Positions 1,230-58,685 of a stretch of DNA of 64,000 nucleotides are shown piece by piece (the first letter of the stretch is position 1; each line of letters starts with the position of its first letter). The position numbers and the translations under genes were made by a program. The DNA comes from Haplodiscus bocki (taxonomy: Eukaryota): positions 29,636,001-29,700,000 of the forward strand of contig OZ296650.1 of the NCBI GenBank assembly GCA_965655095.1. The letters run 5' to 3'. Under the pieces are notes generated by a model. The model was not told where the DNA came from. It made no database searches and worked only from the letters and a program-made list of their open reading frames with translations.

Positions 1230-1630
1230 TTTTAACACATTCTGACTGAAAACATGAATGTGTACTGGAAACCTGGTTGTGCTTAGTTTTTTATTCCGTC
1301 CAAAACTTACATTTTTTGACCTCATCGGGGAGTCTAGTCATCCTAGTGTAAATTGTCAAAAATGAAAGCTTTTTGACTGGTACTCGTCCATCTTCGCGTT
1401 GTTTACTGCGCACTTTTCTGAAACATTGGGCAGCAAAATGGCGTAACATGATTGACATATCAACTTTTCCAATATGAGATCCTGTGACTTTTGCGAACAA
1501 ACTTTTGATTGACAGCTGGTATTGTATTTCTAAGAGTGTCAATCACATCTCGGATTATGGTTTCAATCGTCGTTCGGGATCCGTGATCTCAACTGAGCAG
1601 AATGTGTGGTGAAGTTTCACTTCAAGTCTG
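1230..1630 (+). repeat. Diverged dispersed element, copy 1 of 4 (hairpin-ended)
   Basis: Colinear blocks (TGTA.TGGAAAC, TTTTGACCTCAT, GCAAAATGGC, GTCAATC, TGATCTCAAC at 1584, hairpin TGAAGT-TTC-ACTTCA 1610-1624) are shared with ~12250-12790, ~29325-29830 and ~58195-58685. The 5' edge is approximate. Confidence 0.75.
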
Positions 1631-1927
1631 AGTTTTATAATCGAAGTCAGTGGTATTCGTTATTGCAGTGACACCTCGTGACCTTTTTTCAGACACTAGT
1701 TTGGAAGACACTAGTTTGGAGTTATAAACTTCTAAATTGTAAAGTTGTAACTTTGGAACGTCAGCTTTTGTGTATTCTGTACGTCATCTCTATTGCTTAC
1801 CGAGATGTTGTTCACGTTGTCAACAAGTTGGAACGTCTACTTTTACAATGGACTCTTGATTTACTGCCAGCTACTGTCGAACATCCACTATGAACGTTGA
1901 AAATGTAAAGCTCTAAAATTATCCGCC

Positions 1928-1955
1928 ATGAAGGTCAAAATTGTTGTAAAATTCA
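1928..1955 (+). CDS. Speculative first coding exon of SCOC (MKVKIVVKF)
   Basis: CCGCCATG Kozak-like start, then a GTATGT donor at 1956 in phase 1, matching the phase of the 9221 acceptor. No homology support. Confidence 0.2.
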
Positions 1956-2494
1956 GTATGTAGCGAATAGCTCAAATGTGTCCAATTTAATGTCAACAGC
2001 CTGGGATATCACAAATGGCTGAATGGGGGTTTCACAAATTTATCCCTCCTTTTTTTGAAAGTGGAAAACGCTCACTTATTAAAGCCTATTTTTTATCGTT
2101 ATGATCATAACTTGCGAATGTTCCGAAGTTTTGTGCAGGCCGGATTTTGTTGTGTTGCTTTCTTCAGGCATTTCTGTTCCTAAAATAATCCAATTTTTCA
2201 TCGAATTGTACCTTTCAGCCTGTAGTATTATTAAGGAGAGCCAAATTTCGAAAAACTGTCCTTGCCGAAAAACCCATTTGTGCTCTTCCAAGAAAGCTTC
2301 AGGTGGAAATCCATGGAATAGTGGATACCCTCTTCATTAACTTCTGCAACTTACTTGACTTGTGTTTTTTGACACTGAAGGACGTTTTTTTTAGTTTCCT
2401 CCCCTGGACTGCCGGTTTCATTAGATTGATACCATCCACTGGCCAAGCGATTGATTTCTGACGAAACAAAATTGCTGCCGAGAAGCAGTTATGG

Positions 2495-9220: not shown

Positions 9221-9514
9221 ATCACGCGCTGCACGATTTGTCTTTGCAAGTGAATGCATCTGCGGAGGATTCCAAAAACGAGAACAACGCCTCGCACGAC
9301 TCGACGAACAGTCAGCCCAACTTCACAGAGGTCTCTATATACTCACGCTCAGTGGAGACGACAGGGGACACTGAGAACGGGTGTGGCACCTCCGGAGGTC
9401 AAAGTGGTGCTCCAGGGGGGCTGATTGGGGAGGCATCAACCATGCCAGTGGACGAAGAGGAAGAGGCCAACAGACTGATTGATCAAATTCTTGATCTACA
9501 GAAAACTCTAGATG
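9221..9514 (+). CDS. SCOC: Short coiled-coil protein SCOC (UNC-69 family), coding exon
   Basis: Acceptor TTTAG at 9216-9220. Encodes ...MPVDEEEEANRLIDQILDLQKTLD, matching SCOC EEKTRLINQVLELQHTLE. The GT donor at 9515 (phase 1) joins in frame to 13251. Confidence 0.88.
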
Positions 9515-12249
9515 GTCAGCAAGAACCAAACCAGTCTTTTAATTTTTAAACACTTCTTTTGATAAGGAAAGTGTCTGGAAGAGTAAATATGAAAAAAGTG
9601 AAGTGCCGAAATCACGGAGTGTCTCAGGGTAGAGCTAAATATTGACGTTTATGATCGAGTCAAGTCAAGTTCCAATTTAAAAGTTGCCGGTGTGAGGTCA
9701 AAATCTATGCCAAAGTATTAAACCGAGTAATTCGTTCAACGTATGAAGTAATTACACGAGCTAGCAAGAGAACCGAAGTGTATTACCGACTACTTTCCTT
9801 TTCAATGCATCTCCAACCCGAACTTTCTGTTAAAGTTATACTAGCAGAGGAGGTGTTCATGCGCTCTCGCTTTCTTGCAATTAATCGTGGAGTGTCAAAA
9901 ATTTTTCTTCATGTACCCTAACGAAATACAGCGGTACATTTGAAATTTCAGTAGATTATCTAATCAAGAATTCGAAAAACGGATTTCTTTGTTCGGACGC
10001 TAGTGGTCGAATTGGTTTATCCCGCTTTAGCCCGACTCCTTGCTACCTAAAGCTCCTGTGGAGTGTCAGGGGATAGCTGCTTCATGTTTTTCTTGGGAAA
10101 TTTTTTGACTCAAATTTGAACAGAGAGCATTCTTGCTTTCGTAGCTCTAAGATTTATCTGAAAAACTGCTGATCGGATTGGGCCCACCCAATGCTGATTC
10201 AACTCTTTACTTCCGTGAGCGTCTGGCTAAAAGCCTGGATGGTATATGTTCAACTTTTACCGCGGGATATCTAAACTGGTGTTGAAAAGTTGAAGATGTT
10301 TTCATTTGAGCCATTCGTCGATGGTGTTTTTCTTGAGAAGTATTGGTTGGATGTTTTCAATTCAAGGGTAAATCGACGAATCGCTGTTTGGAGGACCCAT
10401 GAAGGAGCGTGAATGGTGTGACCCAAACTTTTCCTCCAAATTATTTTGGGTTGTAATAGGCCAATCTAAGGAGTTCTTACTTTGTCTTTCGTCGGAAGCG
10501 TATTTCATCGCATTCATCCTTAAAGCTTTTGTTCGATGGGTACTTAGGCGTCTTTCAGAGTGCCAGATTTTCTCTCTTCGGTATTTCTGGCAATAATAAT
10601 TTTGACAGGCACTCCAAGAATCACCAAAATTCAAGCCGCCTGTTTCTTGCGACTTTCGTCTAAAGTAATTTCTTTTGCAATGTCCGGGTTTATTCGTTAA
10701 AAGTCTTGTGATTAGATGTGGGTTTTTGCTCGTGGATCAACGGAGAATTGAACGCTTTGATCATTTACAGGGTATCTTCTTTCTGAATGCACTGCACTTT
10801 CAATCTAATTAATTAATTGCTGGCTTTCGTTGACTTTTTTACAGTTCCGTCGAAGAAATTTTGATAACTATCTGCAGGAAGTTTGTTTTGTGTCGCGAGT
10901 TTTTTTAAATGGTTGTTTTAATGTGTGGTTAGCTTGAGTGTTGATGAGCCGACACTTTTTCTCTGACCACTTTAATGCAATTTTCTGAGCTATTCGGGCA
11001 ATCTTTCCGCAGAACAGAGTTTGTTCGCGCCGCGCTTCCACTTGATTTATCTCGTGCTGTGCGGAGCTTTCGGTCTCATTCCACACATTTGGTTTTGTTG
11101 CACGAGATATTCCAATATGTTTGTGATCGCTGGTGTTAAACTTTATTTTGAAAAATTCAACGTTGCATTAGAAATAAAAGTTATTTTTAATTGCGGTGTT
11201 CGTCAAACTTGTTTTTCTGCAAGGCTAGTGATACCAATGCCTCTATCAAGCGTTGATTGAACTCATGCCTTCAGTTTCTGCGGTGTCGCTTGAAGGGCCG
11301 TTTTCAAGTTTGTTGTTAAATGTCTTGTTCTGTCGTTGCAAAATTGCAGATTTTTATTTTCGTTCATGGATAATGATTTTCTGAATGAGGTGTGATCGGA
11401 TTTGCTCCATGAAGCTGTGATTCAACTACCTCTAGCGTACAGTTTCTGTGCGGCAGCTTGAATGGCCTCTCTTCAAAATAGTTATTGAGGAAAATCTTGA
11501 CTTCAATTAAGAGTTCGAAGCTGTTTTTACTTTTCTTCCTTTTTTGGGAGAGAGATTAGTTGTCGGATTGGCTCCGTCTAGCGCTGATTCAGCCGCGTGT
11601 GGCATAGGTTTCATATGGAGTAGTTTCGATAGCCTGTTTCCTGTTAATATTACGGAAAATGTGGAGTTAATTGAAGACTTGAAGATGAGTTTACTTTCGT
11701 TCTTTATTTCTCTCTATCCCTTGTTTTTCTCTATCCCTTGTTGTTGCGTCCTTCTTGAACTTATCCTTTCACTCGTTCCCTTGAGCTTCGGCTGAATTGA
11801 ATTGACTGAAGTAACTGCATCATATAACTCGGTAAACTTTAATCGTTTGGTGATCGAAGCTTTAGCGGAAAGATGTTTGGCACTGCATCACAGATTGCGA
11901 ATCCGAGTTGGTTTTTGTGGTACATTCGAAGAAAAAAATGTTTGGTGTTGAAGTTGTTTTCGCTTGTGTTTATTGATCTCTGAGCTCTGTGATAGGGTTA
12001 AAACTGAGGTATTTTACGTTAATTGCTTTCAAATAACTAGTTTTAATTAGCCTATCATTTTTTGGTATTGTTCTTTTTAAAAACACATCTGTAATCGGTA
12101 TATTGAGCTAGGTGTTGAAATGTATGGAATTGCTGGAGTCCTTTTAGCATCATTGACGTCGTGATTTTTTTTAGAAACTTTCGGTTCTAGCTTTTTCAAA
12201 GAAAGTTTCTATATTCCCAGGGTGTTTACGAAACTTGTGCTCCGCTGAA

Positions 12250-12790
12250 AGAATGTGCATTGAAACCGGCTGATGGCCAGTTTTTGTATGGTTTTTCAGA
12301 TTTGCATTTTTTGACGTCATGAGATGATCTAGTGTAAACGATCAAAAACGAACGTTTTTGAGAGATGTGGTTGGTACTTGCCTGTTTTCCTGTTCTGAAA
12401 ACTGCGAATTTCTAACACATTGGTCTGAAAAATAAAACATTATGGGTCCTACTAGGTCATGTTTTTGGCATGTAAAGGTTTTGCTCATGAAACAATATAG
12501 CAGGTAATTGTTCATTTTCGCGTTGCTTACTGGGCGAATCTCCTAATTATTCGGTTGCAAAATGGCTTTACTTAAAATGACTTCATTGACAGATCAACTT
12601 TTCTAGTGAGACACTGTGGCTGGTACTTGTTTCAATTCGACTTTTTTGGAGCAAGCAATCATTCAATTGACAATTGTAGTCAATCACGCCCCTGATCATG
12701 GTTTTAAATGTCTCTTAGAATCGTGGATGTGTTCTGTTTATCTTTGATCTCAACGGACAAGTCAAAGTGTTGCGAAGTTCCGCTTCGCCT
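12250..12790 (+). repeat. Diverged dispersed element, copy 2 of 4
   Basis: TGATCTCAAC at 12745; hairpin GCGAAG-TTCCG-CTTCGC at 12772-12788; upstream blocks colinear with the other copies. Confidence 0.75.
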
Positions 12791-13053
12791 TCGTGTCGTG
12801 CCGCCTTTTAAATAATCTACCAGAAAAATTTTCCTAAAATCCAATTGAATCCGCGCAAGAATCTAAGATTGTTTTTTGAAACGTATATGGTCATAGTTTT
12901 TTATATCCGAAGAATATTTTAAACTTGCAACAATATTGGAAAGCTCTGCTGATTAATTAGTGGTGTTGTTTTTGGGCCCTTTTCTGAATTAGTAGTGAAT
13001 ATTTTAACAATGATTGTAATTAGACGTGTTGGTCTCAGCGTGACGATACTGGA

Positions 13054-13759: not shown

Positions 13760-16700
13760 ATTCTCCAGATATGACGGTTAGACCTCACCAACCTACTGTG
13801 ACGAAAAATGGCTAAAATGTTGAATTTGGTAGATTTCTCTCATTTCTTTCTATCTAAGGCTGAATCGAAAGCCTATTATTTGTAGAGTGATTAAGTTGAG
13901 CTTTTTTTGAGATTTTGTTGTCTAGAAATGAATCAAACATAGCTAGAAATGCTTATGATGTCGCTTTTAGCTAGTTTTCAAAATGCCTTTTTTCCGAAAC
14001 TACCCACTTAATTCTTTTCCTTCACGGCCTAATCGACAGCTTACTTGGTCGATTCGTTCAAGTCGAGCACTTATTCTAGATTTTTTTTTCATTTTCGGGA
14101 CATCCTGGTCTAAACTTTGCTACAAATGATTCTGATTTCGATTTCTGAGAGTTTTCAAAGTACCGTTTTTCGTAATTGTTTTCATTTACAGCTGAATCGG
14201 CAGCTTGCTTTATGTCGTCGATTCTCTTAAGTTGAGTACTTTTTACCGAGCTTGTTTTTTTTCCAGACATGCTTTTGCAAATGCATCGGATGTTGATTTT
14301 ACTCAATTTTCTAAAAGGTGATGTGATGATGATCATGATCACAAAAGGTGATGTGATGAAGGGGATCTAGAGAGGATAAAATCCAAACCTTGCTTGAAAA
14401 GCGTGTGATATCGATTACAGTCAATTTTCATTTTGTTTCTCTCGAATTACTGACTCAGTTTCTCTCATCCAGTGTTTAATCAACTTCCTATTCTGGATAG
14501 ATTGATTTATCTAGTGTCAGTTTTCTAGTTTAAACGATATTATTCATGAGTAGTATATGCTGGGGGTCCCCGCAGAGTTTTATGGCTCCCGAAATTTTTT
14601 CAAAGATTTCCTTCAACTTTTGGCTCAAAATGGCCCTCAACGGTAACCAAAAGGCGCATACAGTATTTCAAGAGCGAATGCAGTGTACTGGATCCGCATC
14701 CTAAACATTTACCTCAGGGAAAAGAGCGACTTTTAACTATTATACATAGTTGTTTCATTCGACTTGATTAGAAACTACTCAAATATCAAAGTTTGAACAG
14801 CGTATAAAACTAGGCGACCCTTACTTACCAACTTAGACGTTATGAACGCAGATTAAACATCTGCTGAACAAATCTGGGACAGGACAAACCCGAATTTGAA
14901 AACAAATGAATGTTTCCTGCATGATGTCGAAAACGAAAAAACTTGCTCAAATTGTCGTTTCTTCGTAAATTCCCATAGAAAAAATGGTTCCACATATCCG
15001 AGCTCAACACAACAATCGAAATACAAACTGAGCGAGCCCAAAAACTATATTTGAAAACAAGTAAACAGTTGTTGCAGGATGCTGAAAACGAAAATACTTG
15101 CTTGAAAAGTCGTTCGTTCCCTTATAAGCATGGAAACACATGGTTTTACGGCTGCAAAACCCATTAATGGTGTCGTTTGCGCTTGGGTGAGGGCAAAACC
15201 CATATTGGAAGTTAACTAAAACTTGGTATCAACATGCTGAAAAGCAGAAGACATTCTGAAAAAGCCGTTCTATCGCAATTTCGCATGGGAAAGAAAGTTT
15301 CACACTTCCGAACTGAACTCAATCTGATGTGGAAGTTTGGGTGATCTCAATAACTATATTCGAAAACATGTCAACGATAGTGGCAGGTTGCTGAAGTTCC
15401 AGACTCTTTGAAAATGTCGTTTCTATTTCAATTGGCATCAAAAAGATAGTTTCGCAACTCCCAACTCACATAAAAATTTGACCTAGAAGTTTTGGTGAAC
15501 CTCTATTTTATAGGAACCGTTCTAAACACAATTGAAAGTGAGCTGCATTATGCTGAACGCAAAGAAAATTCCCGAAAGTGTCGTTCTTTCGCAAGTACTC
15601 ATCGAAGCAAAATCGTTTCACAAGTCCCAACCCTGAACGTTTGAAGTACAAGTTTGGGAGAGCCCAAAACCCTATTTGCAAGCTATTGAAGGTTTGTTAC
15701 ATGGTACCGAAGTAGAGAATTTTTTCTGAAACTGTCGCTTCTTCGTGGGCTCTTATTGAAAAGAGAGCCAGAACGAAGATACATTTTGAGAACACGGTTT
15801 CTTCATAAGTTGCATCAGAAATGATAGTTCTACATATCCGAAATCGCCCGAACAATTGATGTACAATTCTGGGAAGCCGAAAAAAATTTGAGAGCAAGTG
15901 AAAGATAGCTGCGCGATGCGGAAAACTAAAATATTTTCTGTCAGCTAATCGGTTGACGTAAAACTCTTGGTGAACCCTAAAAATTTACTTGGATACAAGT
16001 AAATATTGGGCTCAACATGTCAAAACAAAAAGACATTCTGAAATACTGCTCTTTCGTAAATTCGCAGCATAAGGCTTAGCTTTGCTCCTCCAACCCAAGC
16101 CAAAGAATTTCATGTACGACATTAAGCGCTTTGAGAAACCCAAAAATCATATTTGAAATGAGTGAAATGTTCTTACAACCCAAGAATCTCAAACAGTTTC
16201 TGAAAATGTCGTTCCCTCGCAACTTCAAAATGGAAAAGGTGGTTGCACAACTCTGACTTCAACTGAAAACTCGACGCTTCAGCCTAGCCCAACTAACTGT
16301 AAAAATTGACCTCGAGAACAGTTGGGACGAGCTGAAAACCAAAACTTCCGGCGAAACTTGTTTTCCCTTCGTAAGTTGGCATGGAAGAACTTTTCTAACT
16401 CAGAACTCAACCAAGCATTTGATATACAAGTGTGGAAAAGCACAAAAGCCACATTCAAAAACAAATCATCGCTAATTGCAGGATGCCGAAAACGACAATA
16501 CACTGTGGAAATTTTGTTTCTTCCTGAATTTGCAACGCAGACGATGGTGTCACAACCCTGAACTGGCAGAATACTTTTGATTTACAAATTCGCCTGCGCT
16601 CAAAAATTCTCCAGATATGACGGTTAGAGCTCACCAACCTACTATTATTTGTAGAGTGATTAAGTTGAGCTTTTTTGAGATTTTGTTGTCTAGAAATGAA

Positions 16701-19383: not shown

Positions 19384-20400
19384 ACATTTGAAAACAAGCA
19401 AACGCTGGTCCCATCATGCCGAATCGAAAACAATAGGTGAACAACTCCAAAATTAACTGAAGGTTAGTTGTACAAATTTGGCGCGCCCGAAAAATATTTT
19501 TCATTACAAATGAACGTTGGTAGAGCAATTCAGAAACATTGCAAACAGTCTGAACATTTCGTTCTTTCGTTGAATTCGCATCGAAGAAGATCGCTCAACA
19601 ACACCGAACTCTATACGTTTGAGGTTCGGGTTTTCCAGAGAACCGAGCCATATTTGGAAGAGTAAAAAAAAGTGGAATGATGCCAAAAAGGAAAATTGTT
19701 TGAGCTTTTTGTTTTTAGTAAAGTGTCATCAAAGCAGATGATTTTCACACCATGAAGCTCCTCGGAACTTTTGGTATACACATTTGAACGGGCCCAAAAA
19801 CCATATTTTGAAAGTCGTAAACATTACTCAAAGGATGCCGAAAAAAAAGATACTCTTGGAATGTATTCCTCGTACATTTGTACCGAAGATAGTTTTGCAC
19901 CTCCGAACACACCGAAACATTTAAAATACACAATTCGGTGAGTCCAAAAACCGTTTCCTCAAACAAATAGAAATTTTTATTCCAACATGTTGAACACCAG
20001 AAGTCATTCCGAAGACACTTGCTTTGCAAATTCGCGTATGAAACTTTATACACCCGAACCGAACAAAAGCTGATGTACAATTTTGGGCCGGCCCAATATC
20101 TACATTTGAAAACAAGTATTCATTGGTCTCAATATGCTGAAGTCCATAGCACATTCTGAAGGCTCCTTTTTTTACGCATCTGAATTCGGTTGAAAATAGT
20201 GATTCGTCAGTTTGGGCGATCTCGAAAACATACAAGAAGCCACAAATGAAAACCAATAAACGTTATTCGTGCAATGCTGGAACCTAAAAAGCTTTCATAA
20301 ATGTCGCTGCTTAGTAATTTTGAAGCCAACAGATGGTTTCGCAACACCAAACTCAACCAAATTTTAGACAGACAAGAGTTTAGTGCCCAAAAACAATATT
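14880..20400 (+). repeat. Degenerate ~155-bp tandem (satellite-like) repeat tracts: 14880-16605 and ~17655-20400, mirrored at ~25340-28095
   Basis: An ATTTGAAAACAA-like anchor recurs at 14894, 15049, 15204 and 15358, and at ~19228/19385 and ~19650/19804. Recurring ACATTCTGAAAA.GTCGTT and TTGATGTACAA.TTTGGG blocks lie between the anchors. Confidence 0.75.
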
Positions 20401-28994: not shown

Positions 28995-29324
28995 GAAACG
29001 GTGAAAATTATTGTGGAAAAATTGTTGCTTTTTTGGCATGGATATACGTCTGTTTTTTTTTGCAGTGAGTTTGCGTTGGCGAAGATTGGTAAATTGAAAG
29101 ATCTGAGTTTTTTCTTGGGCGCAGATACTTCTGCACCGTCTAAGTACGTATGCCATCGTTTTATCAGAGCCTGATGAATTTTTTAACTGGCCCCTCAAAT
29201 GTTAAAAAGAACCATCATTTGGGTTCTTTTTAACATTCAAAAGAAACATTCAAAATTTTGAATGATATTGCCAAAATTATTCCAATATAAAGAAAATTAC
29301 CCTCAAAATTTGATTATATGGGGG

Positions 29325-48063: not shown

Positions 48064-48645
48064 ATGAAACTGCATGGCTTTGAGTTTTGGGACAACATAG
48101 GGCGACCCAAGTATGTACTTGCCCCCATGGTCGAACACAGCGAGCTTGCGTGGAGACTGCTGAGCAGAAAATATGGCGCCCAGTTAACTTACACACCCAT
48201 GATAAATTCATCAATCATTCTAACTGATGAAACATATCGCAAAAAAATGATGCAAATGCACAAATCGGATTGGCCCTTGATTGTCCAGTTCTGTGGAAAT
48301 GATCCGCACACTTTATTGAAAGCTGCCAAAATTGTGGAGCCTTTTTGTGAAGCTGTTGATTTGAATTTGGGTTGTCCCCAAAATATTGCCAAAAGAGGTC
48401 ATTATGGGGCGTTTTTAGAAGAATGGGATCTGATTCACAAAATTGTAAATACTCTTCATACTGGGCTGGAAACTATACCTGTAACGGTTAAATTCAGAGT
48501 ATTCGACTCCACGGAGTCAAGCTGTGAGTTTGCGAAAATGTTGGTCAAAGCAGGAGCCTCGGTTTTGGCTGTGCATGGACGTACCCGCGAACAGAAGGGT
48601 CCGCTCACCGGGTTGGCTGATTGGCAGAAAATTGCTGAGATAAAA
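48064..48645 (+). CDS. DUS1L: tRNA-dihydrouridine(16/17) synthase DUS1-like, coding exon 1
   Basis: Motifs LAPMVEHSELAWRLLSR, YTPM, PLIVQFCGND, DLNLGCPQNIAKRGHYGAFL, VTVKFR, VHGRTREQKG, ADW. TTTCAG acceptor ends at 48057. Donor GTTAGT at 48646 (phase 0). Confidence 0.95.
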
Positions 48646-48993
48646 GTTAGTTTAAGGACATTGCACGAAGAGATGCAGATTTTCGAGGGAGTTGCGTCAA
48701 CTTTAGATCAGGAAACTATGTACATGCTGTAAATCTTTGTATCATCTCTGGGTAGTTATAGTTTAATTTAAAAAGCAATTAACTAAGTTGAGTAACCATC
48801 ATTCCAAATGAATATCAAACGAGAGTTTTTTATACATATTATGGAAAGTAATATGAACAGAATAAAGCTGCAGTGAGTCTCCAGCTCTTGCAGCTGGGCC
48901 TCACATCTATAATAGTGAAGTTTTGAAACCGGAGACTTTTTTCAGATCTCTTTGCTTCTCTTCTGCTAAGTCAATTAATTTCAGCTTGCTACT

Positions 48994-51800
48994 TTAAAGG
49001 GTGTTGGCCATAATGTTGATGTCACATTCATTTATTGGCGTGGTTCTCAAGACATTTTTCCGTTTTCCTCTCAAAGCAATAAGTGCTGTACCTTTTTTAA
49101 TGAAGATGCGAGGGAGAGTGATCCCATCGACGAAAAGTCGTCAATCCACAACAACAACAATAATGGTTAAAAAAATCCGTTTTCGAATGAGCGTGATTGC
49201 CTCGACCTATGAGGATTGTCTTTTCGCTCAATTTTTCAGCCCAAAACTTTGTGAAAATGAGTTGCCTCTTCACTTGTAGCACCGTTAGTGCTAAAGACGA
49301 GTGGGGTGAAGCTAGAGTTTTCAATTTCACGTACACGTTCATTGTATTGGGTCTTTTTAATTGTTTCATTCTGTTTCAGGATTGTTTTCTGAGGTTTATT
49401 CACGTGACTGGGACAGTTTGAGTGGGTTACTCTGACGTCGAAAAAAAGTTCTCCAGAGGTCGCCAGAAACTTTGGCATAATACGTCGAGCCTCGCATTTT
49501 CATCCGAATTAGCTCTGCGAGAGAGAATATCTCTGAGTTTAAAGGTATCAGCCGGTTCAATTCCGACGTCTTTGCATACGTTCGATAGTAACTCCGCTTC
49601 AAGATCTCGTATCGCGTTATGCCTTAGGATTACAAATTCTCCAAGTTGACATATCATTGCCTGATCATTGATGTTTTCCTTCCCGCATTCACATAGGCGA
49701 TGGAGATCTTTAATACCCCACTCGTATCTCAAATGTATTGCATCTTTGAACTTTGCTCTGTTGAAGTACATTCCTTGTTCTTTGGATAGTAATGACGTCA
49801 ACCATGTTGAGTTCCTTCCGTTTGCAATAGTTCTAAGTGTCTCTGCATTTTATCTTCGCTTTTTCCTAGTACTTCCTCGTAGGAAATTTTGGCTGATTGC
49901 AGTATGTTTTCACATTTTCAATTTCCGGTCAGGATCAGATTGAAAAGCTTCTCCAGATATGATATCTCGCTTCTTGTAATTCTTCAGTTAAAAAATTGGA
50001 ATCACGGAATTGTTGCCGGCATCGTTGAGACGGATTTGGAACCCCCAGTCCTCCATACCGAGTATGTAGGGCAGTAATATCTCTATCCGTATCAGAAATG
50101 TTTTGACGTCCTGTGATAACCTCCACGAAGCTACAATTTTCTCCTTGTAAGTGTTTCATCAAATCGCTCACCCTGTCAAGGATGCTGTTGAAATACTTCC
50201 ACCTGTTCCGGAGAATTCGCGTGTACACTATGTAGCTGAGATGGGGCTCGGATTGCGCTGCTATTGAAAATGCCCTAACTTGTTTTCTCCAGGTTTTGTT
50301 TTTGTCCTCTCCGAACTTCCTGCAAGGTTGTATTTCACCTATAACGGCTCCCAAATGTTTCGGTGCGGTTTGAGTGCTGCTCTTTCCGGTTTTTTCCGAA
50401 AATTCTCTTAGCTTCAGTTGCTATTTCTTCAGACTTGCAGATAAGCCTACATTTAGATGCCTTGGGAAAGTAACCATAATTTCGGCCAAACTCGTTTATC
50501 TGATCCCACCATTTCTTTACAGGCAAAATTTCACTCAGGCATTCAACTTCATCCGCAAACCATTCCAGTACTATTTTTCTTCGATCGAGTCTGTCCATCA
50601 AGTGTTTCATACCGATAGCGTTATAGCCCCTTGCGATGTTGTCCTCTTGTATAGTGCCTTCTTGCGATTGAAGTTTCCTGCCTTTCCGGATGAACGGGCG
50701 TGCTGCTTTCTGGTAGGCGTTCATAAGATAGCAATGGATTTTGGGACAGATGAACTGAGCATTATGTAGGTATCATTCTCGATTATCGAAAGCGTTTGAT
50801 GCGTCTATCTGAAGCATGCATTCCGTTGAAGTTAAACCATAGATTTTTGTGGCCCCTTGGATAGCAGCTACGATGTCATCTTCTTGTCCACCGCAGTTTT
50901 GTCGGACGCCATCTGTTTCGTCCACATCCGCTTTCAGAAGCTTGGAAACTGTTTTACCGATGACTCTTCGTAGGACTTCTATGCCGATCGGTGTAACAGT
51001 TCCTTGGCCATCCTTTTCCAAAGCAATAGTTTGCATGCGGTGTAGGTCTCAAGTGCCACCGGATCAACTTTTTCACAACGTATTTTTCCGGCAATTTTAG
51101 ACACGGTGTTGCAAAGCTTACTTGTTTGGATTTGTTCGATCAGGCCATTCGTCGAAAATTCGCCGCGTCTGGACCACTGGGTCCTTTAGATCCTTGCGTC
51201 TGCATTGCCGCGTGGTATATTTCGGAGTGGTTCTTGGATTCAAAGACAACGGGGTTAATTTCCACTGGTGATCCCTGAATCGTTTGGGATGTCAGTACTT
51301 GTCGACGTGGCGGACGCAGTTTTTGTAATTCTTTCATCACATTTTCATTTGGCTGTAGGACACCTTTGGAATCCTCTTGTTCAATGAGATTCATTGCTGC
51401 TGTCAACTTTCCTTCAAGCACTAGTTTGGCGAATGCTTCATTGATACTTGACTGGCATGTTGTAGATTTGTGCAGCTCTTGTTGGATTGCTTCACATTCC
51501 TTATAAATCAGATCGGTTTCCCCATCAATCCACCAATTCAGTCGTTTCTCTAAAATTTTCGAATGATCTTTCGATATCTTGAAAGGTTTTTGTATCAACA
51601 TGCAGTAGACATGGAAGATTTTTCGTGATTTGTGGTGCAGGGAGGAGTTTTCGACGAAGAGGTGGAGGATTCAGCCAGCTTGTTGAACAAAACCACTGCA
51701 TTACCCTGTGGTAGATCAAACGCTTTTCATCCAAGACAGCTTCCTCGTAAATATCATCAATTCTCCGATAAAATATTTCGTCTTTGCTCATCGGAGTGCT
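48994..51800 (-). mobile_element. Decayed CRE-like non-LTR retrotransposon ORF (RT plus restriction-like endonuclease), in DUS1L intron
   Basis: Ordered fragments: LIQKP..KDHSKILEKRL, PSGPDA, PIGIEVLRRVIGK, DASNAF, SQEGTIQ, WFADE, YGYFPKASKC, GAVIG, RYGGLG, RHNAIRD, ARLDV, FFDVRVTH, FTPLVFSTNG. Many frameshifts. Confidence 0.85.
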
Positions 51801-52289
51801 TGGTTCCGACCAACGCGAGGTAATTCAGAGCACTTGCATGCCCTGGGTTATACCACCCGAGACATCATTTTCGTATCTGGTGTCATTTTTCAGGGGCATC
51901 CATCCCTTGAGCCATCCCTTGAGTAAGGCCGGAGTGTAAATCTTGACATTTTTTTGCATATGAAATCGCTGGTCCATTTTTTCGCCGATGAAAGTCCACT
52001 GAACATGACATGGACATAACCACATAGATGCCACCAAAGACCTTGATTTTTTTTCGAAACACCATTACATGAACTTCATTTCATTTGATCGGCCATTTTA
52101 TTGTTACTCAAATTCTCGTTCGTGATCTGTGCTAATGAAAGCTACGAAGATCAAAAAGAGCCTATGTTGAATCAGTTGCGAGATGTTGTCTTCTTCTCTT
52201 TCTGCCAATATTCTCAAGATCAGATAGTTGTTAAAAATACTTAAATGAATTGTCGTTCTAGCTGAAGGTTCAAATGAACTTAGCCGAGT

Positions 52290-52745
52290 TCATTTCGCAC
52301 GCTGGCATCAGTTTTCTCACGATATTATATCAATTTTTCTCAAGGTCGATAATGTGAGTACCAGTTTCCAGTAGCTTGTGGTATATACTCGTAGCTTTGT
52401 GGCGTTGACAGTGCAGAATTGAGCGGACACGTGGTTTGAAGGAGCGGAGGAGAGAGCAAAGTTCTTCGGGATCGGCAGTTGGGTAGTCTTTTCTGGGATC
52501 GTTTGTTTTGGATTGGGATAACGAGATCGGATGTTGCTTATAATGTCGTGCCAAATTATGAGGTCAGACTTGCATCTCAATGTTTAGTCGTTGTTCAGTA
52601 GAAATTGCAATAGCTGTTTCGGATTGGGATGATGTGGGTTGAGCCCAATCCCTGGAATTGCTTTTAAATGTCCTCTGAGATATTTGTTTTCTTTTTCGGC
52701 TTTTTTGGCGAATAGTCTGAGTAAGCTAGCTGCAATTATATGCAT
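52290..52745 (-). pseudogene. Disrupted ORF upstream of the CRE-like RT, possibly an SGNH-esterase-like ORF1
   Basis: Manual translation: MHIIAASLLRLFAKK...KAIPGIGLNP...QFLLNND*TLRCKSDLIIWHDIISN..., then a frameshift to ...EELCSLLRSFKPRVRSILHCQR. The fold call is inference. Confidence 0.4.
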
Positions 52746-53273
52746 GTCCAAGTGTGAAACAATTAATTTGAAACAAAACGTGATAAACCTATCAAATATT
52801 TCTTTCTAATAAGTTTATCACTACAATTAGTCTAATAGTTTTATTCTAATTCAAATAACGATTGATACTTTTGGAGTTTAAATAAGTGTAAAGCATGAAT
52901 CGGTGAAAGTATCAAACTGGTTGAGTTTTCAACAATCTACAATCCCACCTGCCAATAACCGAAAACTTGTGTTCCATGGCGATAATTGTGATGTGCTTGC
53001 CTCGCATTTATTAACTTTTTGAGCCGGAAATTAACTCTTTTGGGAGACAGCAAGCAGCAACCAGGGTTAAGTTTTTCAAGCATGAGGACTTGGAACGGTC
53101 GCCAGTAAAATCAGCGGACAGAATCGAAAATAATTAGTTTTTTTTCAATCCTGCCGGGCATTAAATGGGGCAAGACAATGAGCTCCCCAATAACGCTTAT
53201 AAATTCGGGAAACTCTGAACTATGCCGCTCCCTCCTAGACACCCAACCCATCAGACACGAACGGGTAGAAAGG

Positions 53274-53349: not shown

Positions 53350-56300
53350 GCTGAAAAGGTGAAACTCACTCCAGATACTACTAACGCTACGAAGTTTCAG
53401 CGATCAAGATACCCGCAAGAGAAATTGATAAACCAGTTGTTTCCTTATATCAAGCTCGACTACAGTTTCGCTACTAAAACTGGTAAAGTTGTATTGCTCT
53501 TCAACAATGCTGATGATTGTGGAAAAGTCTTCACTGGTTGGAATCCCATTTTTTGGGAAACTCTACCGAAGCAGTCTATAATGAAGCGTCTAACAAGAAG
53601 CTTTTTGTCGTAATTAAAGATGTTTCAATTGAACTTTCGAATCATGTAATCGAGAAAGATTTTGGGAACTACATTGAGTTTAAACGACATCAACGTAGCA
53701 GTCGCCCTCTTCCTGTTTTAAAACTACTTTTCAAGTCAAAAACCGAATATGATATTGCTATCATTAGTGGAAGAAACATTGCAAATATGCATTTCAAAAT
53801 GGAAGCGAAAATCGATATAATTAAATTGATTCAATGTTCCAATTGTCAGAAATGGGGAAATCACATCTCCAAAATGTTCAAATTTCAACCAGTTTGTGCT
53901 ATTTTTGGCTACGACCGTCCTTCGAAATGTCATATTGATTGTTTTTGCTCCCATTGACCACTGCGACAAATGTATACCACTTGATTATATGTACTGCATA
54001 AATTGTCATGGTAACACCCTGCATTTGATAAAAGATGCAAAGTTTCAAAGGAGTATACGCTCGAGTTGCTTCAGAATTCAATGGATAATTCCACTTCTAA
54101 CCTCGCACTGATGCAAGTGAACATTGCAGGATTTTCGTTGCGTTCAATTTCGTCTCTGGATCGCTACATAAATGATAATAGTATTCATCTAGTTGCTGTG
54201 TCGGAATCTCATGGTCGAATGTTAGGATTCAAAAATTACGATGTGTACAAGTCTCGAGTGCAAACAAATGGATGAGTCTTGTTAGTAAACAATCATCTAA
54301 AATCCTATGAGGTGACAGAACGTGTTTTTGGATATTTATACGTCGTTTTTGTCTTTATAAAGTCTCGCGATACAGAATTTCTAGTCGGGTCAATATATGC
54401 TGGCTTGTCTGATGTTTTATGAGTTTTCATGAATTTGATTAGCTTTTTCAAAATTCTTCGCTGCAAAAACCAGCTCAAAGGTCCAGTTGTTCCGGGAAAT
54501 TTCAACGCACGGCATACGGCCTGGGGTGACACTACGTCTAATGGATGTGGAAAATTTATTTACCTTTTTTCGGTAATGAGGGCTTTGTTGTGTCATCTCC
54601 CTACGAAGCTACATTTGGTAAAAGCTATGTCAATGGTGGAAGTGTTATTAACTTCTGCCTGGGCGGGTCTTCAGTGTGCAATTTACTCTCTGATGCATTG
54701 GTTGTTACGGAGGTCGAACTCTTTACTGGTGCGCCTTCCGTTGGTCATTGGCCAATCTGTTATGAATGGAACATCACCAAACCTCTAAAATATTCGAGTT
54801 AGACATGTCCTTGTTCGTGTAAACTGGGATTATCATATTTTCTGTCTTGGAGGTGGACGTTGAGGTAAATTTCGATGTTTTGATTAAGCAATTCCCTTCA
54901 TAACTTCTACAAGCAATGAACGAACGTATCGATAAATGTAATCAGCTCATCTCACAAAATCGTGTCGACCCATTCAAAACCATCTTGGATTGCTAAATTG
55001 AGTGACCCAGCTCTGGATATCAATAAGGTGCGACGAAGGCTCAAGTGGAATTAAACTCCGTCTAATAAAGAAATCTTGGTCGATCTTAAACTGAGAATGA
55101 AGGAGGAAATTGGGAAAAACATCAACCAGTGGACTGAAGAAACTCTAAATGTGCTGAATGACACGAACAGTGGTAGATACTTCAGAGCGGTCAAACGCTT
55201 CAATGAGAACAGCTCATCAGAAAATGTTCCTATTTCGATTCACATTGGGAAAACGTAAGTTCTGACGCGGATAAGGCTAAAGTTCTCGAGAAAGTCTTTC
55301 TCCAAGGCGGACACCTCCGGAACAAATGTTTTGATGAATCTTTTCTCAATGGTGCTGTGTCAGTGGTTAATGTGGCTTTTATTGAGTCTAGAAACATTTT
55401 TGAACGAAATTCAATCATTGATATTTGCTTTGATATCAACAGAATAACTATGAATGAATTGGTTTCTGCAATTCATAGGGTTTATAGTATAAGGGTGCTG
55501 ATCCTCATAGCCTACACCCGCGATTTTTGAAGTTTTGTAAGTTTTTTACGCTCAGCTTTTTTTACACCTTTTTAACACGTGTTTAGATACGGGTTTCTGG
55601 CCTTTCAAAGAGGTGTCCGTTAGGCTCTTGAAAAAAGCGGGAAAAGTGTATTCAAATGCTACTTCTTATAGACCCATCTGGTTAGCTTCTCTTTTGTGCA
55701 AAGTATTGGAACGTAATTTCGATGAAAGTTTGAGAAAGCCAAAGCGCATCAAATTGGAGGCTGAGCAATACGGCTTCAGGGAGGACGTTCAACTATGAAT
55801 TATCTTTACCAGCTGATATGATCTAAAAACCAGGATTGCTTCTAAGGATTTCTGTGTGGCCACTTTCTACGACTTAGCAAAAAGCTTTCTTATCAATAAA
55901 TGATAAGTTCTTCTATTGTTCGCTAAAAATTGGTTTGCATGTAAGAATCGTACCTCTAACTTATAGTTTTTTCAAAAACAAGTGCTCGCTTTGAAGTGAA
56001 CCAGTCTTTGGGGAATTTTTTACTCCATCCATTAGTGTACCGCAACGTGCAGTCCTTTCTCTATCACTAATCATAGTTTTCTTATCCGATTTTCTGAAAA
56101 ACTATGAAACGAAATATAAGTATGCTGATGATACTACGAGACTATGTTCTCCTTTTGAATCCGTCACGCAGTATGAAACTCCCGAAGAGTTTTGCAAAAC
56201 CTGGAGATTGGTCATTAACAGTACTAAAACTGAGCAAATGCTTATCAATACTGTTGCAAGTTCGGCAAAGTATCCAATTACGGATGTTGTCAAAGTTCTT

Positions 56301-57000
56301 GGTGTTAAAGTAGGTCGACAATTGAAGTTTAGAAGTCATGTTGACCTTTTGACGGCCTTCAACCTATTCACTGGGAATAATTTTATATGTATTATGAATA
56401 GAGGCATTAAGCCGACTTTCTTAATTATCTCACAGCTCGGGCTCAAAAATCAACTTTGCTATTATGCATTTTGAAGGAGCATGTAACTATCTGTAGGTCT
56501 TCTTTAAAATTCAATGATTGTCGCTTATCGCGAGATTATGATAAATTGCTTGAAGACTTCGATTTTTTTGTTGCAGCAGGACTCGAGGAAGTATTCTAGT
56601 TATAATTCATACGTGTTACACACATATTTGACAAAGAGAAACTGACAGTAAATAATTTCTACTGAATACAAGGGACTGATTGTAGGAAATAAACTTCTCG
56701 AAATATCGGATCGTAATAATGTGTCTACCAATTACCAGATCCTTACATTAAGGATATTAGTCAATGATTTTGGATTGAACATGTTGAAATACGATACGTG
56801 GAGTGCTGAACTCCCGCTCTGTGAGTGCGATGAATATGATACAGATGAGCATATCATTTTTTAACGTCAACGTATAAGTAGGCGCGTTAAAAAATTTTTT
56901 GATGGAGGAAGAAATGCCGTCTTGTCTGGTAGCTCCTATCAATTGTAAAAATGAGAAACCAATAAGGGCGTTTATCGACCTATTGAAGGTGAATGAAAGT
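53350..57000 (+). mobile_element. Decayed near-full-length APE-type LINE (I/Jockey-like): ORF1 with zinc knuckles, ORF2 APE-RT-CCHC
   Basis: ORF1 IQCSNCQKWGNH and CINCHGN. APE motifs LMQVNIAG, VAVSESH, GNFNARHTAWG, GHWPI. RT motifs YRPIWLASLLCKVLER, QYGFR, YADDT (56121-56135). C-terminal PLCECDEYDTDEHIIF at ~56815-56860. Confidence 0.85.
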
Positions 57001-58194
57001 TTTCTTGACTCCTGCGACACTTCATGAAAAATTGAACTCCAATCCATAATCTGTTGACACATGTACTCGTGCAACAAAGACAATAAAAGATTCTCTCTCA
57101 AGAAGCAGCACCACGGGATCTGTTTGAGCAAATTTTTCCAAAAATCTTCTGTTTTTTAATTCTTCTGGTGCGAACAACAAGAACTGAGTGAAGACATTCA
57201 ACAGATAGTATCGGGACCAGGAGAAAAAAACAGTGTTTGGTTTAAATCCGAATTGGAAAAAGTGGTCAATTTTGGTATTACACAAGGAAGTAGTGGAAGA
57301 CTATATTGAGTTAAGCAAGACTGCCAGGTCATTGAAGAAAAAAACTGCCATATCAATAGAAGACTTCGACTTTTCATGATCGACACGAAATTGTTTGGCA
57401 TATTGTCTTAGGGGACACTGTTCTATACTGATTTTTCAACATGATACACAGTGTATCAAATTCATTAGCTGAGTACCTTGTGACACAGACCACCGCTCTT
57501 CGAACAACAAAAATTCCACGAATCTTACTAGAGGAGCAGTGGCCTACCTTACGTCAGCAGCAAATCCCAGAAATGAATTTTTAGATACAACCTGGCAAGT
57601 TTTAGTTTTTGAATGGGGTAGAAATTTTCTTCGATAATTTCGGAAACTTTATTGTTTTTGATAGGCTTTTATCTGGTTTTGATTGTTGTTGCTGTACCGA
57701 ACTTTCGGTCTGAAGGATTTCATTTTACCGGCTTTGAGAAGCTCCGCATCGCCTCTCCGGTACACTTCCGCAATTAAGTGGTGTTTTGCAGGCTTTTCCC
57801 ACACGTTTCCGATGCGTTCACAACTCACTTTAGTTCATGAGCTTTCGCTTTTTGGCGAAAATTTGTTCATGAGGTTTCGGTGACTTGCAAAATTCTATTC
57901 ATATAGCCTGTTTTCCCGCGTCAGTGTTTGTTTTAATTATAAAGTGAATTAACTGAGTTTTGTTTAATCTGTACTTTTCGTTGTAACGTGGCCCCCTCAA
58001 ATATCCTGTATGCTTGCTCGATTCGTTCACTATTGTTCCGTTGGCGCAAGTGTTTCGAAACAGAGCTTCACCTCTGTGTTTAAAACCCGCAGTATAAGAA
58101 GTCTGCGGAGTATCAAAGACGTACTGTTTCACACTTTGCACAGGAAATTTTTTGACTTTCAGTTTCAAATTGGAAAACATTTATCTTGCTTCTT

Positions 58195-58685
58195 TTTTAC
58201 ACATTCTACCTGAAAGGTAGAAGGTGTATAGGAAACTGGTTTATGTTTAGTTTTCGTATCCTGTCCAAAACTTGATATTTTTAACGTGATCAGAGATCAT
58301 AGTCATCAAGTGTAAACGGTCAAAATGGCCTGTTTTCGGCAGGTACGTGTTTATTTTCGCGCTGCTTTATGTGCAAACTATCAAAAAATTGGACGGCAGC
58401 AGCGTAACTTGAAGAGGCGTGATTGGCGTATCAATTTTTGTGACCAATGAGACAGTGTGGAAAGTAATTGTTCATTTTTGCGTTTCTTACTGTGCAAAGA
58501 AATTCCTTAACATTGGGCATCAAATAAATAACGTAACCTGAAAAGACATCATTTGCATATCAAATTTTCGAGTATTTCTAAAACTGTCAATCGTATCTCC
58601 GATCATGGTTTCAAATGTCGTTTGGGATCCGTGATCTCAACTGAGAAGTCAGAATGTTTTGCGAAGTTGCGCTTCGCCTCTGTGT
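58195..58685 (+). repeat. Diverged dispersed element, copy 4 of 4
   Basis: TGATCTCAAC at 58632; hairpin GCGAAG-TTGCG-CTTCGC at 58661-58677. GGGATCCGTGATCTCAACTGAG is identical to copy 1. Confidence 0.78.

What the first reader, a model, noticed from the sequence alone, without database searches (positions are those of the whole stretch)
1230..58685. Old hairpin-ended element repeatedly found in sense orientation just upstream of long-intron splice acceptors
Seen: four strongly diverged copies (~1230-1630, 12250-12790, 29325-29830, 58195-58685), all on the transcribed strand. Each keeps an invariant TGATCTCAAC and a terminal stem (GCGAAG-N5-CTTCGC twice, one G-U variant, and TGAAGT-TTC-ACTTCA). 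Three end 463, 271 and 335 bp before the acceptors at 13251, 30100 and 59012. The fourth is ~300 bp before a speculative SCOC start exon. I saw no copy deep inside the ~40 kb of intron or intergenic filler. Inference: a cis-element marking the 3' end of giant introns, an intronic structured RNA, or a TE end retained preferentially near exons.
Basis: partly seen in the sequence, partly recalled or inferred. Interest (0 to 1): 0.72.

Follow-up and report, generated by a model that had tools for sequence, protein, structure and literature searches.

The report
Decayed rolling-circle transposon copies in introns
The four "hairpin-ended elements" are old copies of an abundant non-coding rolling-circle transposon (a Helentron derivative, DINE-1-like), not a splicing signal, but in a small genome-wide sample its copies near genes all point the same way as the gene, and that is unexplained.

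Summary
The four same-strand copies, the TGATCTCAAC motif, the 3' stems and the distances to three acceptors are real.

**What they are.** They belong to one interspersed family of about 10^4 copies with a ~560-bp consensus. Its layout matches the published non-autonomous Helentron (HINE, DINE-1-like):
- a T-run at the 5' end
- a 12-bp subterminal inverted repeat
- hairpins at both ends
- two ~120-bp central tandem units
- a T flank and no target-site duplication

The "terminal stem" is the element's 3' hairpin (in Helitrons, a transposition terminator). Across 27 copies it decays as neutral drift predicts. Rfam finds nothing.

**Why they sit near acceptors.** Younger repeats and palindromes fill two of the three introns. 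Without them, the introns were about 1.7, 2.6 and 3.7 kb. A retrocopy puts SCOC exon 1 at 9354-9514. Copy 1 therefore lies behind the upstream gene, not before a SCOC start exon.

**What survives.** Sense orientation holds outside the window in 9 of 9 gene-linked copies (p = 0.002). Acceptor proximity does not: 7 of the 9 lie after an exon and 2 before one.

**Verdict.** This is an ordinary transposon family.

The parts
1230..1633 (+). HINE copy 1, with one central unit. T-run and 5' subTIR lie at 1230-1246. The 3' hairpin TGAAGT-TTC-ACTTCA lies at 1610-1624. It sits behind the GPHR gene's 3' end, not in a known intron.
   Evidence: 78-82% identical to the consensus; gene context
12225..12796 (+). 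HINE copy 2, from an older or different subfamily (67% to the consensus). The 3' hairpin lies at 12772-12788. The copy ends about 455 bp before the SCOC exon 2 acceptor, inside a 3.7-kb intron.
29307..29835 (+). HINE copy 3. It lacks the 5' subTIR and is 70% identical to the consensus. The 3' hairpin at 29813-29829 has one T-G mismatch. The copy ends about 265 bp before the acceptor at 30100.
58193..58685 (+). HINE copy 4, full length. T-run lies at 58193-58198 and the 5' subTIR at 58199-58210. The 5' hairpin folds at -10.5 kcal/mol. The 3' hairpin lies at 58661-58677. The copy ends about 327 bp before the DUS exon 2 acceptor.
51..689 (+). Last coding exon of an ABA_GPCR / Golgi pH regulator-type gene. 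AATAAA lies at 895.
   Evidence: PF12430, E 1.5e-39
9354..9514 (+). SCOC exon 1, with ATG at 9442 and donor 9514|GT.
   Evidence: alignment of the processed retrocopy L043
13251..13375 (+). SCOC exon 2, the coiled-coil core.
   Evidence: (PF10224, 42.8 bits)
30100..30165 (+). Start of the SCOC last exon. It encodes 7 codons, a stop and 3' UTR. Only the part covered by the retrocopy is given.
48064..48645 (+). DUS (dihydrouridine synthase) coding exon 1, with donor GTTAGT at 48646.
59012..59584 (+). DUS last coding exon.
13903..28897 (.). Young palindrome complex (arms 91-99% complementary) that fills 15.0 of the 16.7 kb of SCOC intron 2.
48777..52830 (.). Another interspersed repeat inside the DUS intron. 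It is 78-88% identical to its other copies, which makes it less diverged than the HINE family.
53420..57099 (.). A second interspersed repeat inside the DUS intron, 80-84% identical to its other copies.
63135..63529 (-). Two ~50-nt HINE-like 5'-end fragments on the minus strand, at 63135-63186 and 63456-63529, at the small palindrome.

Best explanation
The four elements are decayed copies of one abundant family of non-autonomous Helentron-type rolling-circle transposons (HINE, DINE-1-like).

**Shown**
- The conserved 3' stem is the element's terminal hairpin. In Helitrons this hairpin acts as the transposition terminator.
- TGATCTCAAC is part of the conserved 3' block next to the 3' subterminal inverted repeat.
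- The copies landed in introns or gene flanks that were then short (about 1.7-3.7 kb). Younger repeats, a tandem array and giant palindromes were added later and inflated two of the three introns. That is why the old copies seem to hug exon edges and are absent from the 'filler'.
- The family shows a sense-strand bias relative to genes, in a small sample.

**Inferred**
- The bias arises mainly at integration. A HUH-type single-strand transposase with an asymmetric T|T target would prefer the T-rich, exposed non-template strand.
- Selection against antisense copies may add to it.

I find no evidence that the host uses these copies for splicing or as an RNA.
For: **Abundance**
- A DNA search of the own genome gives 4971 first-look candidates. 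The 40 scored are 69-87% identical.
- The 35-nt 3' motif with up to 3 mismatches occurs 1730 times, against 0 for the reversed control.
- There is 1 copy in 100 kb of arbitrarily chosen DNA.

**Anatomy, from 21 full copies**
- The 5' end carries a T-run of usually 4-5 bases.
- The subTIR ACACATTCTGAC pairs with GTCAGAATGTGT near the 3' end.
- A 5' inverted-repeat partner follows 8-11 nt after the subTIR.
- Two central units of about 119 bp are 96% alike in the consensus, and copy length ranges from 404 to about 800 bp.
- The 3' hairpin GCGAAG-N5-CTTCGC lies 8-9 nt from the end.
- The first base after the element is T in 19 of 19 copies, and no target-site duplication is seen.
- The longest open frame is 60 aa.
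- These features are the published definition of HINE/DINE-1 (PMC4067079; PMC7492417).

**Hairpin decay.** Across 27 copies the mean best stem is 3.9 bp, and 22% have 6 bp or more. Neutral simulation at 10-15% divergence gives 3.8-4.3 bp and 16-30%.

**Inflated introns**
- The palindrome at 13903-28897 fills SCOC intron 2.
- Two younger repeats take 7.7 kb of the 10.4-kb DUS intron.

**Orientation**
- 3 of 32 kinase exons have a copy within about 1 kb, and all three are sense.
- 6 of 29 genome copies have a host exon within 1.5 kb with a Pfam match (five over the family cut-off; Tcp11 just under, E 1e-5). All six are sense and none antisense.
- Flanks of 24 of 29 copies are T-rich on the element strand (p = 2e-4). 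Sense strands of introns are T-rich in the same way.

**Precedent.** Helraiser prefers gene bodies of expressed genes, and its 3' hairpin is a terminator (PMC4778049).
Against: - No autonomous partner with the same ends was shown. None of the 55 perfect 3' motifs lies near a Rep hit.
- No empty site was examined, so the exact ends (uncertain by about 8 nt at the 3' end) and the T|T target are inferred from alignments only.
- All three acceptors in the window have a copy 265-455 bp upstream. Even within the deflated introns, all three copies sit in the 3' third (p about 0.03, post hoc).
- The stems are intact in 3 of the 4 window copies, against about 25% expected (p about 0.05).
- The sense bias rests on 9 independent copies.
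- T-run asymmetry on the sense strand is only 1.1- to 1.5-fold. That predicts about 60% sense, so base composition alone does not explain 9 of 9.
- The 29 loci were picked by similarity to one sense intronic copy, which could bias them slightly.
- Enrichment near exons is only suggestive: 3 copies in 65 kb of exon flanks against 1 in 100 kb of arbitrarily chosen DNA.
Confidence: 0.85

Rival explanations
1. The element is a host cis-element that marks or helps recognise the 3' end of very long introns. It would act, for example, as a recursive-splicing or acceptor-definition aid in sense orientation.
For: - All three confirmed acceptors in the window have a sense copy 265-455 bp upstream.
- Two of 32 kinase exons elsewhere have a sense copy 120-230 bp upstream of the acceptor.
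- Orientation is sense in every gene-linked case.
Against: - About 10^4 copies exist, including tandem and segmentally duplicated ones.
- In the copy-centred sample, all 6 exons with a Pfam match lie upstream of the element, so the element follows a donor. Another copy sits 63 bp after a kinase exon.
- Copy 1 lies behind a gene's poly(A) signal.
- One of the three introns is only 3.7 kb, and the other two were about 1.7 and 2.6 kb before younger insertions.
- The hairpin and the 10-mer decay at the neutral rate.
- 29 of the 32 sampled exons have no copy.
Confidence: 0.03
2. The copies encode an intronic structured RNA whose terminal stem is kept by selection.
For: - Stems are present in all four window copies, with one apparent compensatory C-G to T-A change in copy 1.
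- The whole copy 4 folds somewhat better than shuffles, with z = -2.4.
Against: - No Rfam family reaches its threshold anywhere in the window, and no tRNA-like part is found.
- Half of 27 genome copies have a stem of 3 bp or less, as neutral decay predicts.
- The fold signal comes from the transposon's own inverted repeats and end hairpins.
- No RNA run holding the locus is on record, so expression is untested.
Confidence: 0.02
3. Same transposon, but the sense bias and exon proximity come only from post-insertion filtering. Antisense copies are removed because they disturb splicing. Copies far from exons are lost to deletion, so that old copies survive in the deletion shadow of exons. Integration itself is random.
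For: - The family is old, at 13-33% from the consensus, so selection had time to act.
- The antisense strand carries a good acceptor-like TTCTTCCTTTCAG at the element's 5' end.
- Intron interiors are dominated by younger DNA.
Against: - The sense strand also carries an acceptor-like site, and neither strand has a poly(A) signal or a strong donor in the consensus.
- As far as I know, selection-driven orientation biases described for intronic transposons are moderate, whereas here it is 9 of 9 (lower 95% bound about 72%).
- Neighbouring copies are always co-oriented, also where no gene was found.
Confidence: 0.25
4. It is a different kind of short repeat: a classical TIR MITE, a SINE, a canonical Helitron or an 'introner' element.
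For: It is short and non-coding, has inverted repeats, is frequent in introns and runs in sense orientation.
Against: - The inverted repeats are subterminal and asymmetric, and no target-site duplication is seen.
- There is no tRNA-like head and no A-rich or simple-repeat tail.
- The ends are not 5' TC ... CTRR 3', and the flanks are T...T rather than A...T.
- The element ends lie 60-460 bp from splice sites rather than at them.
Confidence: 0.03

Closest known systems
HINEs, Helentron-associated interspersed elements (DINE-1/INE-1 of Drosophila, HINE-Mo of a mite, HINE-Cq of Culex; Thomas et al. 2014, PMC4067079)
   Same: - A 12-13-bp subterminal inverted repeat a few bases from the 5' end and tens of bases from the 3' end.
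- A second 5' inverted-repeat partner.
- A short 3' stem-loop 8-35 bp from the end.
- Central tandem repeats of variable number.
- T-runs at the boundaries and a T-rich/TT target.
- No target-site duplication and no coding capacity.
- Thousands of copies, many in introns and within 1 kb of genes (PMC2374699).
   Different: - The sequence is unrelated to those families as far as seen.
- The autonomous partner was not identified here.
- A strict sense-strand bias relative to host genes is not reported in the papers I read.
Cg_HINE elements of the Pacific oyster, which carry satellite-like arrays (PMC7492417)
   Same: - A left flank, an array of 100-500-bp monomers and a right flank.
- The array is always in one orientation.
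- TT/T-rich insertion without duplication.
- Copies occur in non-coding parts of genes.
   Different: - Here there are only 1-4 units of about 120 bp.
- The oyster paper reports integration in both orientations on the assembly and did not analyse orientation relative to genes.
Canonical Helitrons and the reconstructed Helraiser (PMC4778049)
   Same: - Rolling-circle logic.
- A 3' hairpin a few bases before the end acts as the transposition terminator.
- Integration is enriched in bodies of expressed genes.
   Different: Canonical Helitrons have 5' TC and 3' CTRR ends, insert between A and T, and lack subterminal inverted repeats. None of this fits the element here.
IS200/IS605 (IS608) single-strand HUH transposons of bacteria
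   Same: - End hairpins.
- An asymmetric short target.
- A strand-specific orientation bias, because the target must be single-stranded (the lagging-strand template). This serves as a mechanistic analogy for the sense bias seen here.
   Different: They are prokaryotic, use a Y1 transposase and are coupled to replication. No homology or shared ends were tested or claimed here.

Membership tests
HINE / non-autonomous Helentron (DINE-1-like) | Subterminal inverted repeats of about 12-13 bp, the 5' one a few nt from the terminus and the 3' one tens of nt from the terminus | tested here: met
   ACACATTCTGAC lies 4-5 nt from the 5' end. Its complement GTCAGAATGTGT lies about 30-37 nt from the 3' end.
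HINE / non-autonomous Helentron (DINE-1-like) | Short stem-loop 8-35 bp from the 3' terminus | tested here: met
   A 6-bp stem with a 5-nt loop ends 8-9 nt before the alignment-defined end.
HINE / non-autonomous Helentron (DINE-1-like) | A second short inverted repeat at the 5' end, with one arm nested in the 5' subTIR | tested here: met
   ACACATTCT ... AGAATGTGT folds at -6.3 to -10.5 kcal/mol, with z = -3.4 to -5.3.
HINE / non-autonomous Helentron (DINE-1-like) | Central tandem repeats or microsatellite of variable length | tested here: met
   Two units of about 119 bp are 96% alike in the consensus. Copy lengths run from 404 to about 800 bp. TRF misses them in decayed copies.
HINE / non-autonomous Helentron (DINE-1-like) | Insertion in TT or T-rich sequence, T-runs at the boundaries, no target-site duplication | tested here: inconclusive
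   T follows the element in 19 of 19 copies, a T-run precedes it, and no direct repeat is seen. No empty site was examined, and the 3' end is uncertain by about 8 nt.
HINE / non-autonomous Helentron (DINE-1-like) | An autonomous Helentron (Rep/helicase with endonuclease) in the same genome sharing the termini | not tested
   Rep (PF14214) ORFs with up to 2225 aa of open frame exist.
Canonical Helitron | 5' TC and 3' CTRR ends, insertion between A and T | tested here: not met
   The 5' end is a T-run plus ACACATT, the 3' end is CTCTGTG(T), and the flanks are T...T.
TIR MITE | Terminal inverted repeats at the very ends, flanked by a target-site duplication | tested here: not met
   The repeats are subterminal and asymmetric, and no duplication is seen in 19 copies.
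SINE | A pol III (tRNA, 5S or 7SL) head and an A-rich or simple-repeat tail | tested here: not met
   ARAGORN finds nothing, Rfam finds nothing, and the 3' end is a hairpin plus CTCTGTG.
Introner element | Element ends coincide with the splice sites of the intron it creates | tested here: not met
   Element ends lie 60-460 bp from donors and acceptors in the window, L012, L018, L026, L030, L056, L059 and L070.
Known RNA family (Rfam 15) | A match at the gathering threshold | tested here: not met
   There are 0 matches in the whole window on both strands.

The most novel reading that the evidence does not exclude
Helentron/HINE integration may be strand-specific relative to gene transcription, or relative to co-oriented replication. 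The HUH transposase would paste the element's top strand into the exposed, T-rich non-template strand of germline-expressed genes. Copies would then end up almost exclusively in sense orientation. This would be a eukaryotic counterpart of the lagging-strand bias of IS608. Sense copies, being T-rich, would be tolerated in introns and would then persist next to exons.
Probability: 0.3. Interest if true: 0.65.

Novelty: new member of a known kind. Interest (0 to 1): 0.35.

Why it matters
**As posed, the finding mostly dissolves.** The element is not a signal for giant introns. It is an old rolling-circle transposon, and younger repeats later inflated two of the three introns around it. This is useful for annotating this repeat-rich genome in three ways:
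- It gives a family definition.
- It corrects the SCOC and DUS exon structures.
- It explains why old repeats hug exons.

**The strand bias is the part worth following.** A strict sense bias of a HUH-type eukaryotic transposon inside genes would bear on an open question, namely what single-stranded target Helitron-like elements use in vivo. The question could be tested at once in annotated genomes with DINE-1 or HINE families, such as Drosophila, Culex and oyster.

Tried and rejected
**Limits I ran into**
I did not try to obtain the letters another way. As a result the orientation sample stayed small, and the ends of the Rep-encoding elements were not compared.
- No run on record as RNA holds the locus, so read laying was not used and expression and strand are untested.
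- The organism was not identified. Earlier scan notes say 'probably a coral', which I did not check.

**Searches that found nothing**
- TRF found no tandem units in the decayed copies. The units show up only in the consensus and in the repeat finder family D15.
- Rfam and ARAGORN found nothing.
- PDB sequence searches of three flanking ORFs without a Pfam domain found nothing. Whether those ORFs are exons downstream of the element stays open.
- Earlier findings searched by sequence, and by the combined words, gave nothing.

**Explanations tested and found wanting**
- I looked for asymmetric poly(A), donor or acceptor signals in the consensus that could drive selection against one orientation. 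There is none of note: one acceptor-like site on each strand.
- T-run asymmetry of sense strands was tested as the sole cause of the bias. It is too weak, at 1.1- to 1.5-fold.

**Classifications rejected:** canonical Helitron, TIR MITE, SINE and introner (see the membership test).
Full report
**1. Observation.** The four regions are homologous. MAFFT gives 63% mean column identity. A profile built from them finds only these four substantial matches in the window, all on the + strand. TGATCTCAAC occurs four times, on the + strand only, against 0.23 expected. Refined ends are 1230-1633, 12225-12796, 29307-29835 and 58193-58685. Two weak 50-nt matches to the 5' end lie on the minus strand at 63135-63186 and 63456-63529.

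**2. Genes in the window.** All known genes run on the + strand.
- ORF 51-689 is the last exon of an ABA_GPCR/GPHR-type gene. AATAAA lies at 895.
- A processed SCOC retrocopy on another chromosome (L043) aligns to the window in three blocks: 9354-9514, 13250-13375 and 30100-30165. This proves both SCOC splice junctions and places exon 1 (ATG at 9442) at 9354-9514. The 'start exon near 1930' does not exist.
- DUS has two coding exons, 48064-48645 (donor GTTAGT) and 59012-59584.
- The three introns are therefore 3.7, 16.7 and 10.4 kb. Each has a sense copy ending 455, 265 and 327 bp before its acceptor. Copy 1 lies behind the upstream gene's poly(A) signal.

**3. What the element is.**
- *Copy number.* A DNA search of the own genome (1.5 Gb) with copy 4 gave 4971 first-look candidates; the 40 scored are 69-87% identical. 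The 35-nt 3' motif with up to 3 mismatches occurs 928 + 802 times, against 0 for the reversed control, and 55 of these are perfect. One copy turned up in 100 kb of arbitrarily chosen DNA. The family therefore has on the order of 10^4 copies.
- *Layout.* Twenty-one full copies give a consensus of about 560 bp, and the copies are 76-87% identical to it. It reads: a T-run; ACACATTCTGAC; its own partner AGAATGTGT 8-11 nt later; about 110 nt; two units of about 119 bp that are 96% alike; about 150 nt ending in TGATCTCAAC-TGACAA; GTCAGAATGTGT, the complement of the 5' repeat; the hairpin GCGAAG-TTCCG-CTTCGC; and CTCTGTG(T).
- *Flanks.* The next base is T in 19 of 19 copies, and no target-site duplication is visible.
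- *Coding.* The longest open frame is 60 aa.
- *Match to the literature.* This is feature for feature the published structure of non-autonomous Helentrons (HINEs, DINE-1-like): subTIRs, a nested 5' inverted repeat, a 3' stem-loop, central repeats, T-runs, a TT target and no duplication (PMC4067079; oyster Cg_HINEs, PMC7492417).
- *Other classes.* The ends do not fit a canonical Helitron, a TIR MITE or a SINE. Rfam and ARAGORN find nothing.
- *Gap.* Rep (Helitron_like_N) ORFs with up to 2225 aa of open frame exist in the genome.

**4. Is the stem or the motif kept by the host?** No.
- In 27 copies the best stem averages 3.9 bp; 22% have 6 bp or more and 48% have 3 bp or less. Neutral decay of the consensus at 10-15% divergence gives 3.8-4.3 bp, 16-30% and 41-55%.
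- TGATCTCAAC is intact in about 5 of 24 genome copies, as expected for a 10-mer at this divergence.
- The window copies are a little better than average, with three of four stems at 6 bp (p about 0.05). I treat this as chance.
- Copies 2 and 3 belong to an older or different subfamily (67-70% to the consensus). Copies 1 and 4 are at 78-94%.

**5. Why near acceptors of 'giant' introns?**
- SCOC intron 2 holds a palindrome complex at 13903-28897, with arms 91-99% complementary. Without it the intron is 1.7 kb, and the element makes up 31% of that.
- The DUS intron holds two other interspersed repeats, at 48777-52830 and 53420-57099. They are 78-88% identical to their best relatives, so they are less diverged than the HINE family. 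Without them the intron is about 2.6 kb.
- SCOC intron 1 is only 3.7 kb.
- The interval between GPHR and SCOC holds a tandem array with a 1243-bp period at 99-100% identity.
- In short, old copies sit in old DNA, and the old DNA is what lies next to exons.

**6. Genome-wide test of position and strand.** I ran two small, independent samples.
- *(a) Exon-anchored sample.* I took 32 kinase-domain exons located by Pfam in the own genome and fetched them with 0.9-1.1 kb on each side, 65 kb of flank in all. Three carry a copy, and all three are in sense.
  - In L059 the copy's 3' end lies at most 230 bp before the exon.
  - In L070 a 3'-truncated copy ends about 120 bp before the true acceptor.
  - In L056 the copy starts about 63 bp after the exon.
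- *(b) Copy-centred sample.* I screened the 1.5-kb flanks of 29 genome copies with a codon log-odds score and then with Pfam.
  - Host exons with a Pfam match were found at six loci.
  - They are a TAF1-like double bromodomain (L012), a myosin head (L026), AAA_34/SBNO (L030), a kinase (L004), MAPEG (L020) and Tcp11 (L018, E 1e-5, just under the cut-off).
  - All six are on the element's strand, and all lie upstream of the element, so the element follows the exon by roughly 80-1100 bp. The donor sites visible are consistent with this.
  - No antisense candidate was confirmed.
  - The same screen on 100 kb of arbitrarily chosen DNA gave two host-like exons plus LINE ORFs.
- *Result for orientation.* It is sense in 9 of 9 copies outside the window (one-sided p = 0.002), and in 13 of 13 with the window.
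- *Result for position.* It is not acceptor-specific. Outside the window, 2 copies lie before an exon and 7 after one.
- *Result for enrichment.* Enrichment near exons is only suggestive: 3 copies in 65 kb against 1 in 100 kb, and 6 of 29 against 2 of 33 three-kb windows.
- *Supporting pattern.*
  - The flanks of 24 of 29 copies are T-rich on the element strand (AT skew -0.02 upstream and -0.06 downstream, p = 2e-4).
  - This equals the skew of known sense strands around exons (-0.06 on the acceptor side and -0.02 on the donor side).
  - Extra copies within 1.5 kb of a copy are always co-oriented. The 10 kb after the window adds two more + copies.

**7. Mechanism.**
- *Shown.* The element is a HINE-type transposon with neutral decay of its hairpin. 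Two of the three introns were inflated by less-diverged DNA. There is a sense bias in a small sample.
- *Established elsewhere.* The 3' hairpin of Helitrons acts as the transposition terminator, and Helraiser integrates preferentially into bodies of expressed genes (PMC4778049). DINE-1 is frequent in introns and within 1 kb of genes (PMC2374699).
- *Inferred.* The sense bias is set at integration. TT and T-runs are only 1.1- to 1.5-fold more frequent than AA and A-runs on sense strands. That predicts about 60% sense, and 9 of 9 has p about 0.01 under that figure. Composition alone is therefore not enough.
- *Two candidate causes.* One is a single-strand target exposed on the non-template strand, or on one replication template, as in IS608. 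The other is selection against antisense copies. The consensus offers no clear asymmetric splice or poly(A) signal, which weakens the selection idea without excluding it.
- *My split for the cause of the bias.* About 50-55% integration, 25-30% selection, and the rest sampling or ascertainment.

**8. Comparison and novelty.** The element is a new member of a known kind (HINE). The papers I read describe gene proximity and T-rich targets but give no orientation analysis relative to genes. My library search for such a bias in Helitron-like elements found none. That is not proof that none exists.

**9. Limits.**
- There is no gene annotation and no run on record as RNA for this organism.
- Fetching was capped at about 300 kb.
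- No empty sites and no autonomous partner were examined.
- The organism is unidentified.
- All statistics rest on small samples and one hypothesis-generating window.

Noticed in passing
L043 (G000:C6:19186400-19186760, minus strand) versus window 9354-9514, 13250-13375 and 30100-30165: A processed, intron-less retrocopy of SCOC, about 84-86% identical to the three parental exons. It still has an open frame of at least 83 aa. It served here as proof of the splice junctions.
   Followed up: partly
window 13903-28897 and 31534-42670: Two giant palindrome complexes with arms 91-99% complementary. The first is built largely of 155-bp-period repeats and fills SCOC intron 2. The second lies between SCOC and DUS.
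   Followed up: partly
window 2495-6200: A tandem array with a 1243-bp period, at least three units at 99-100% identity. It lies between the GPHR gene and SCOC exon 1.
   Followed up: no
window 49229-51038 versus G000:C1:123074122-123122909: Part of the repeat that fills the DUS intron forms a tandem array on another chromosome. The array has a period of about 2.66 kb and at least 18 units, 82-83% identical to the window copy. An interspersed element has turned satellite-like.
   Followed up: no
window 62829-63529: A small palindrome (arms 62829-63059 and 63240-63470, 98% complementary). Two minus-strand fragments in and next to it match the HINE 5' end (T-run, subTIR-like GCACGTTCTGAT, AATGTGTATTGGAAACCG). 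They may be a sister family sharing the 5' terminus.
   Followed up: partly
own genome: Many protein-kinase domains lie in single open frames of 400-2400 aa. Many genes therefore have few, large exons despite the 1.5-Gb genome. DUS has only two coding exons.
   Followed up: no
L012:1-2884: A TAF1-like exon (zinc knuckle plus two bromodomains) is followed by a donor about 120 bp before a full HINE copy. A 238-aa open frame without a Pfam match starts 157 bp after the copy. If that frame is the next exon, the element makes up most of an intron of about 800 bp.
   Followed up: partly
L009 and L010 (G000:C1:94.61 Mb and 94.54 Mb); L023 and L024 (C3:132.12 Mb); C2:135966349, 135971705 and 135977062: HINE copies are carried along in segmental or tandem duplications with periods of about 2.7-5.4 kb. 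This inflates the copy counts and may explain part of the forward/reverse imbalance (928 against 802).
   Followed up: no
own genome: There are 23 strong Helitron_like_N (Rep) matches in two score classes. Several lie in open frames of about 2000 aa or more (C1:147369799, C6:63147355, C2074:9264), so apparently intact autonomous rolling-circle elements are present.
   Followed up: no
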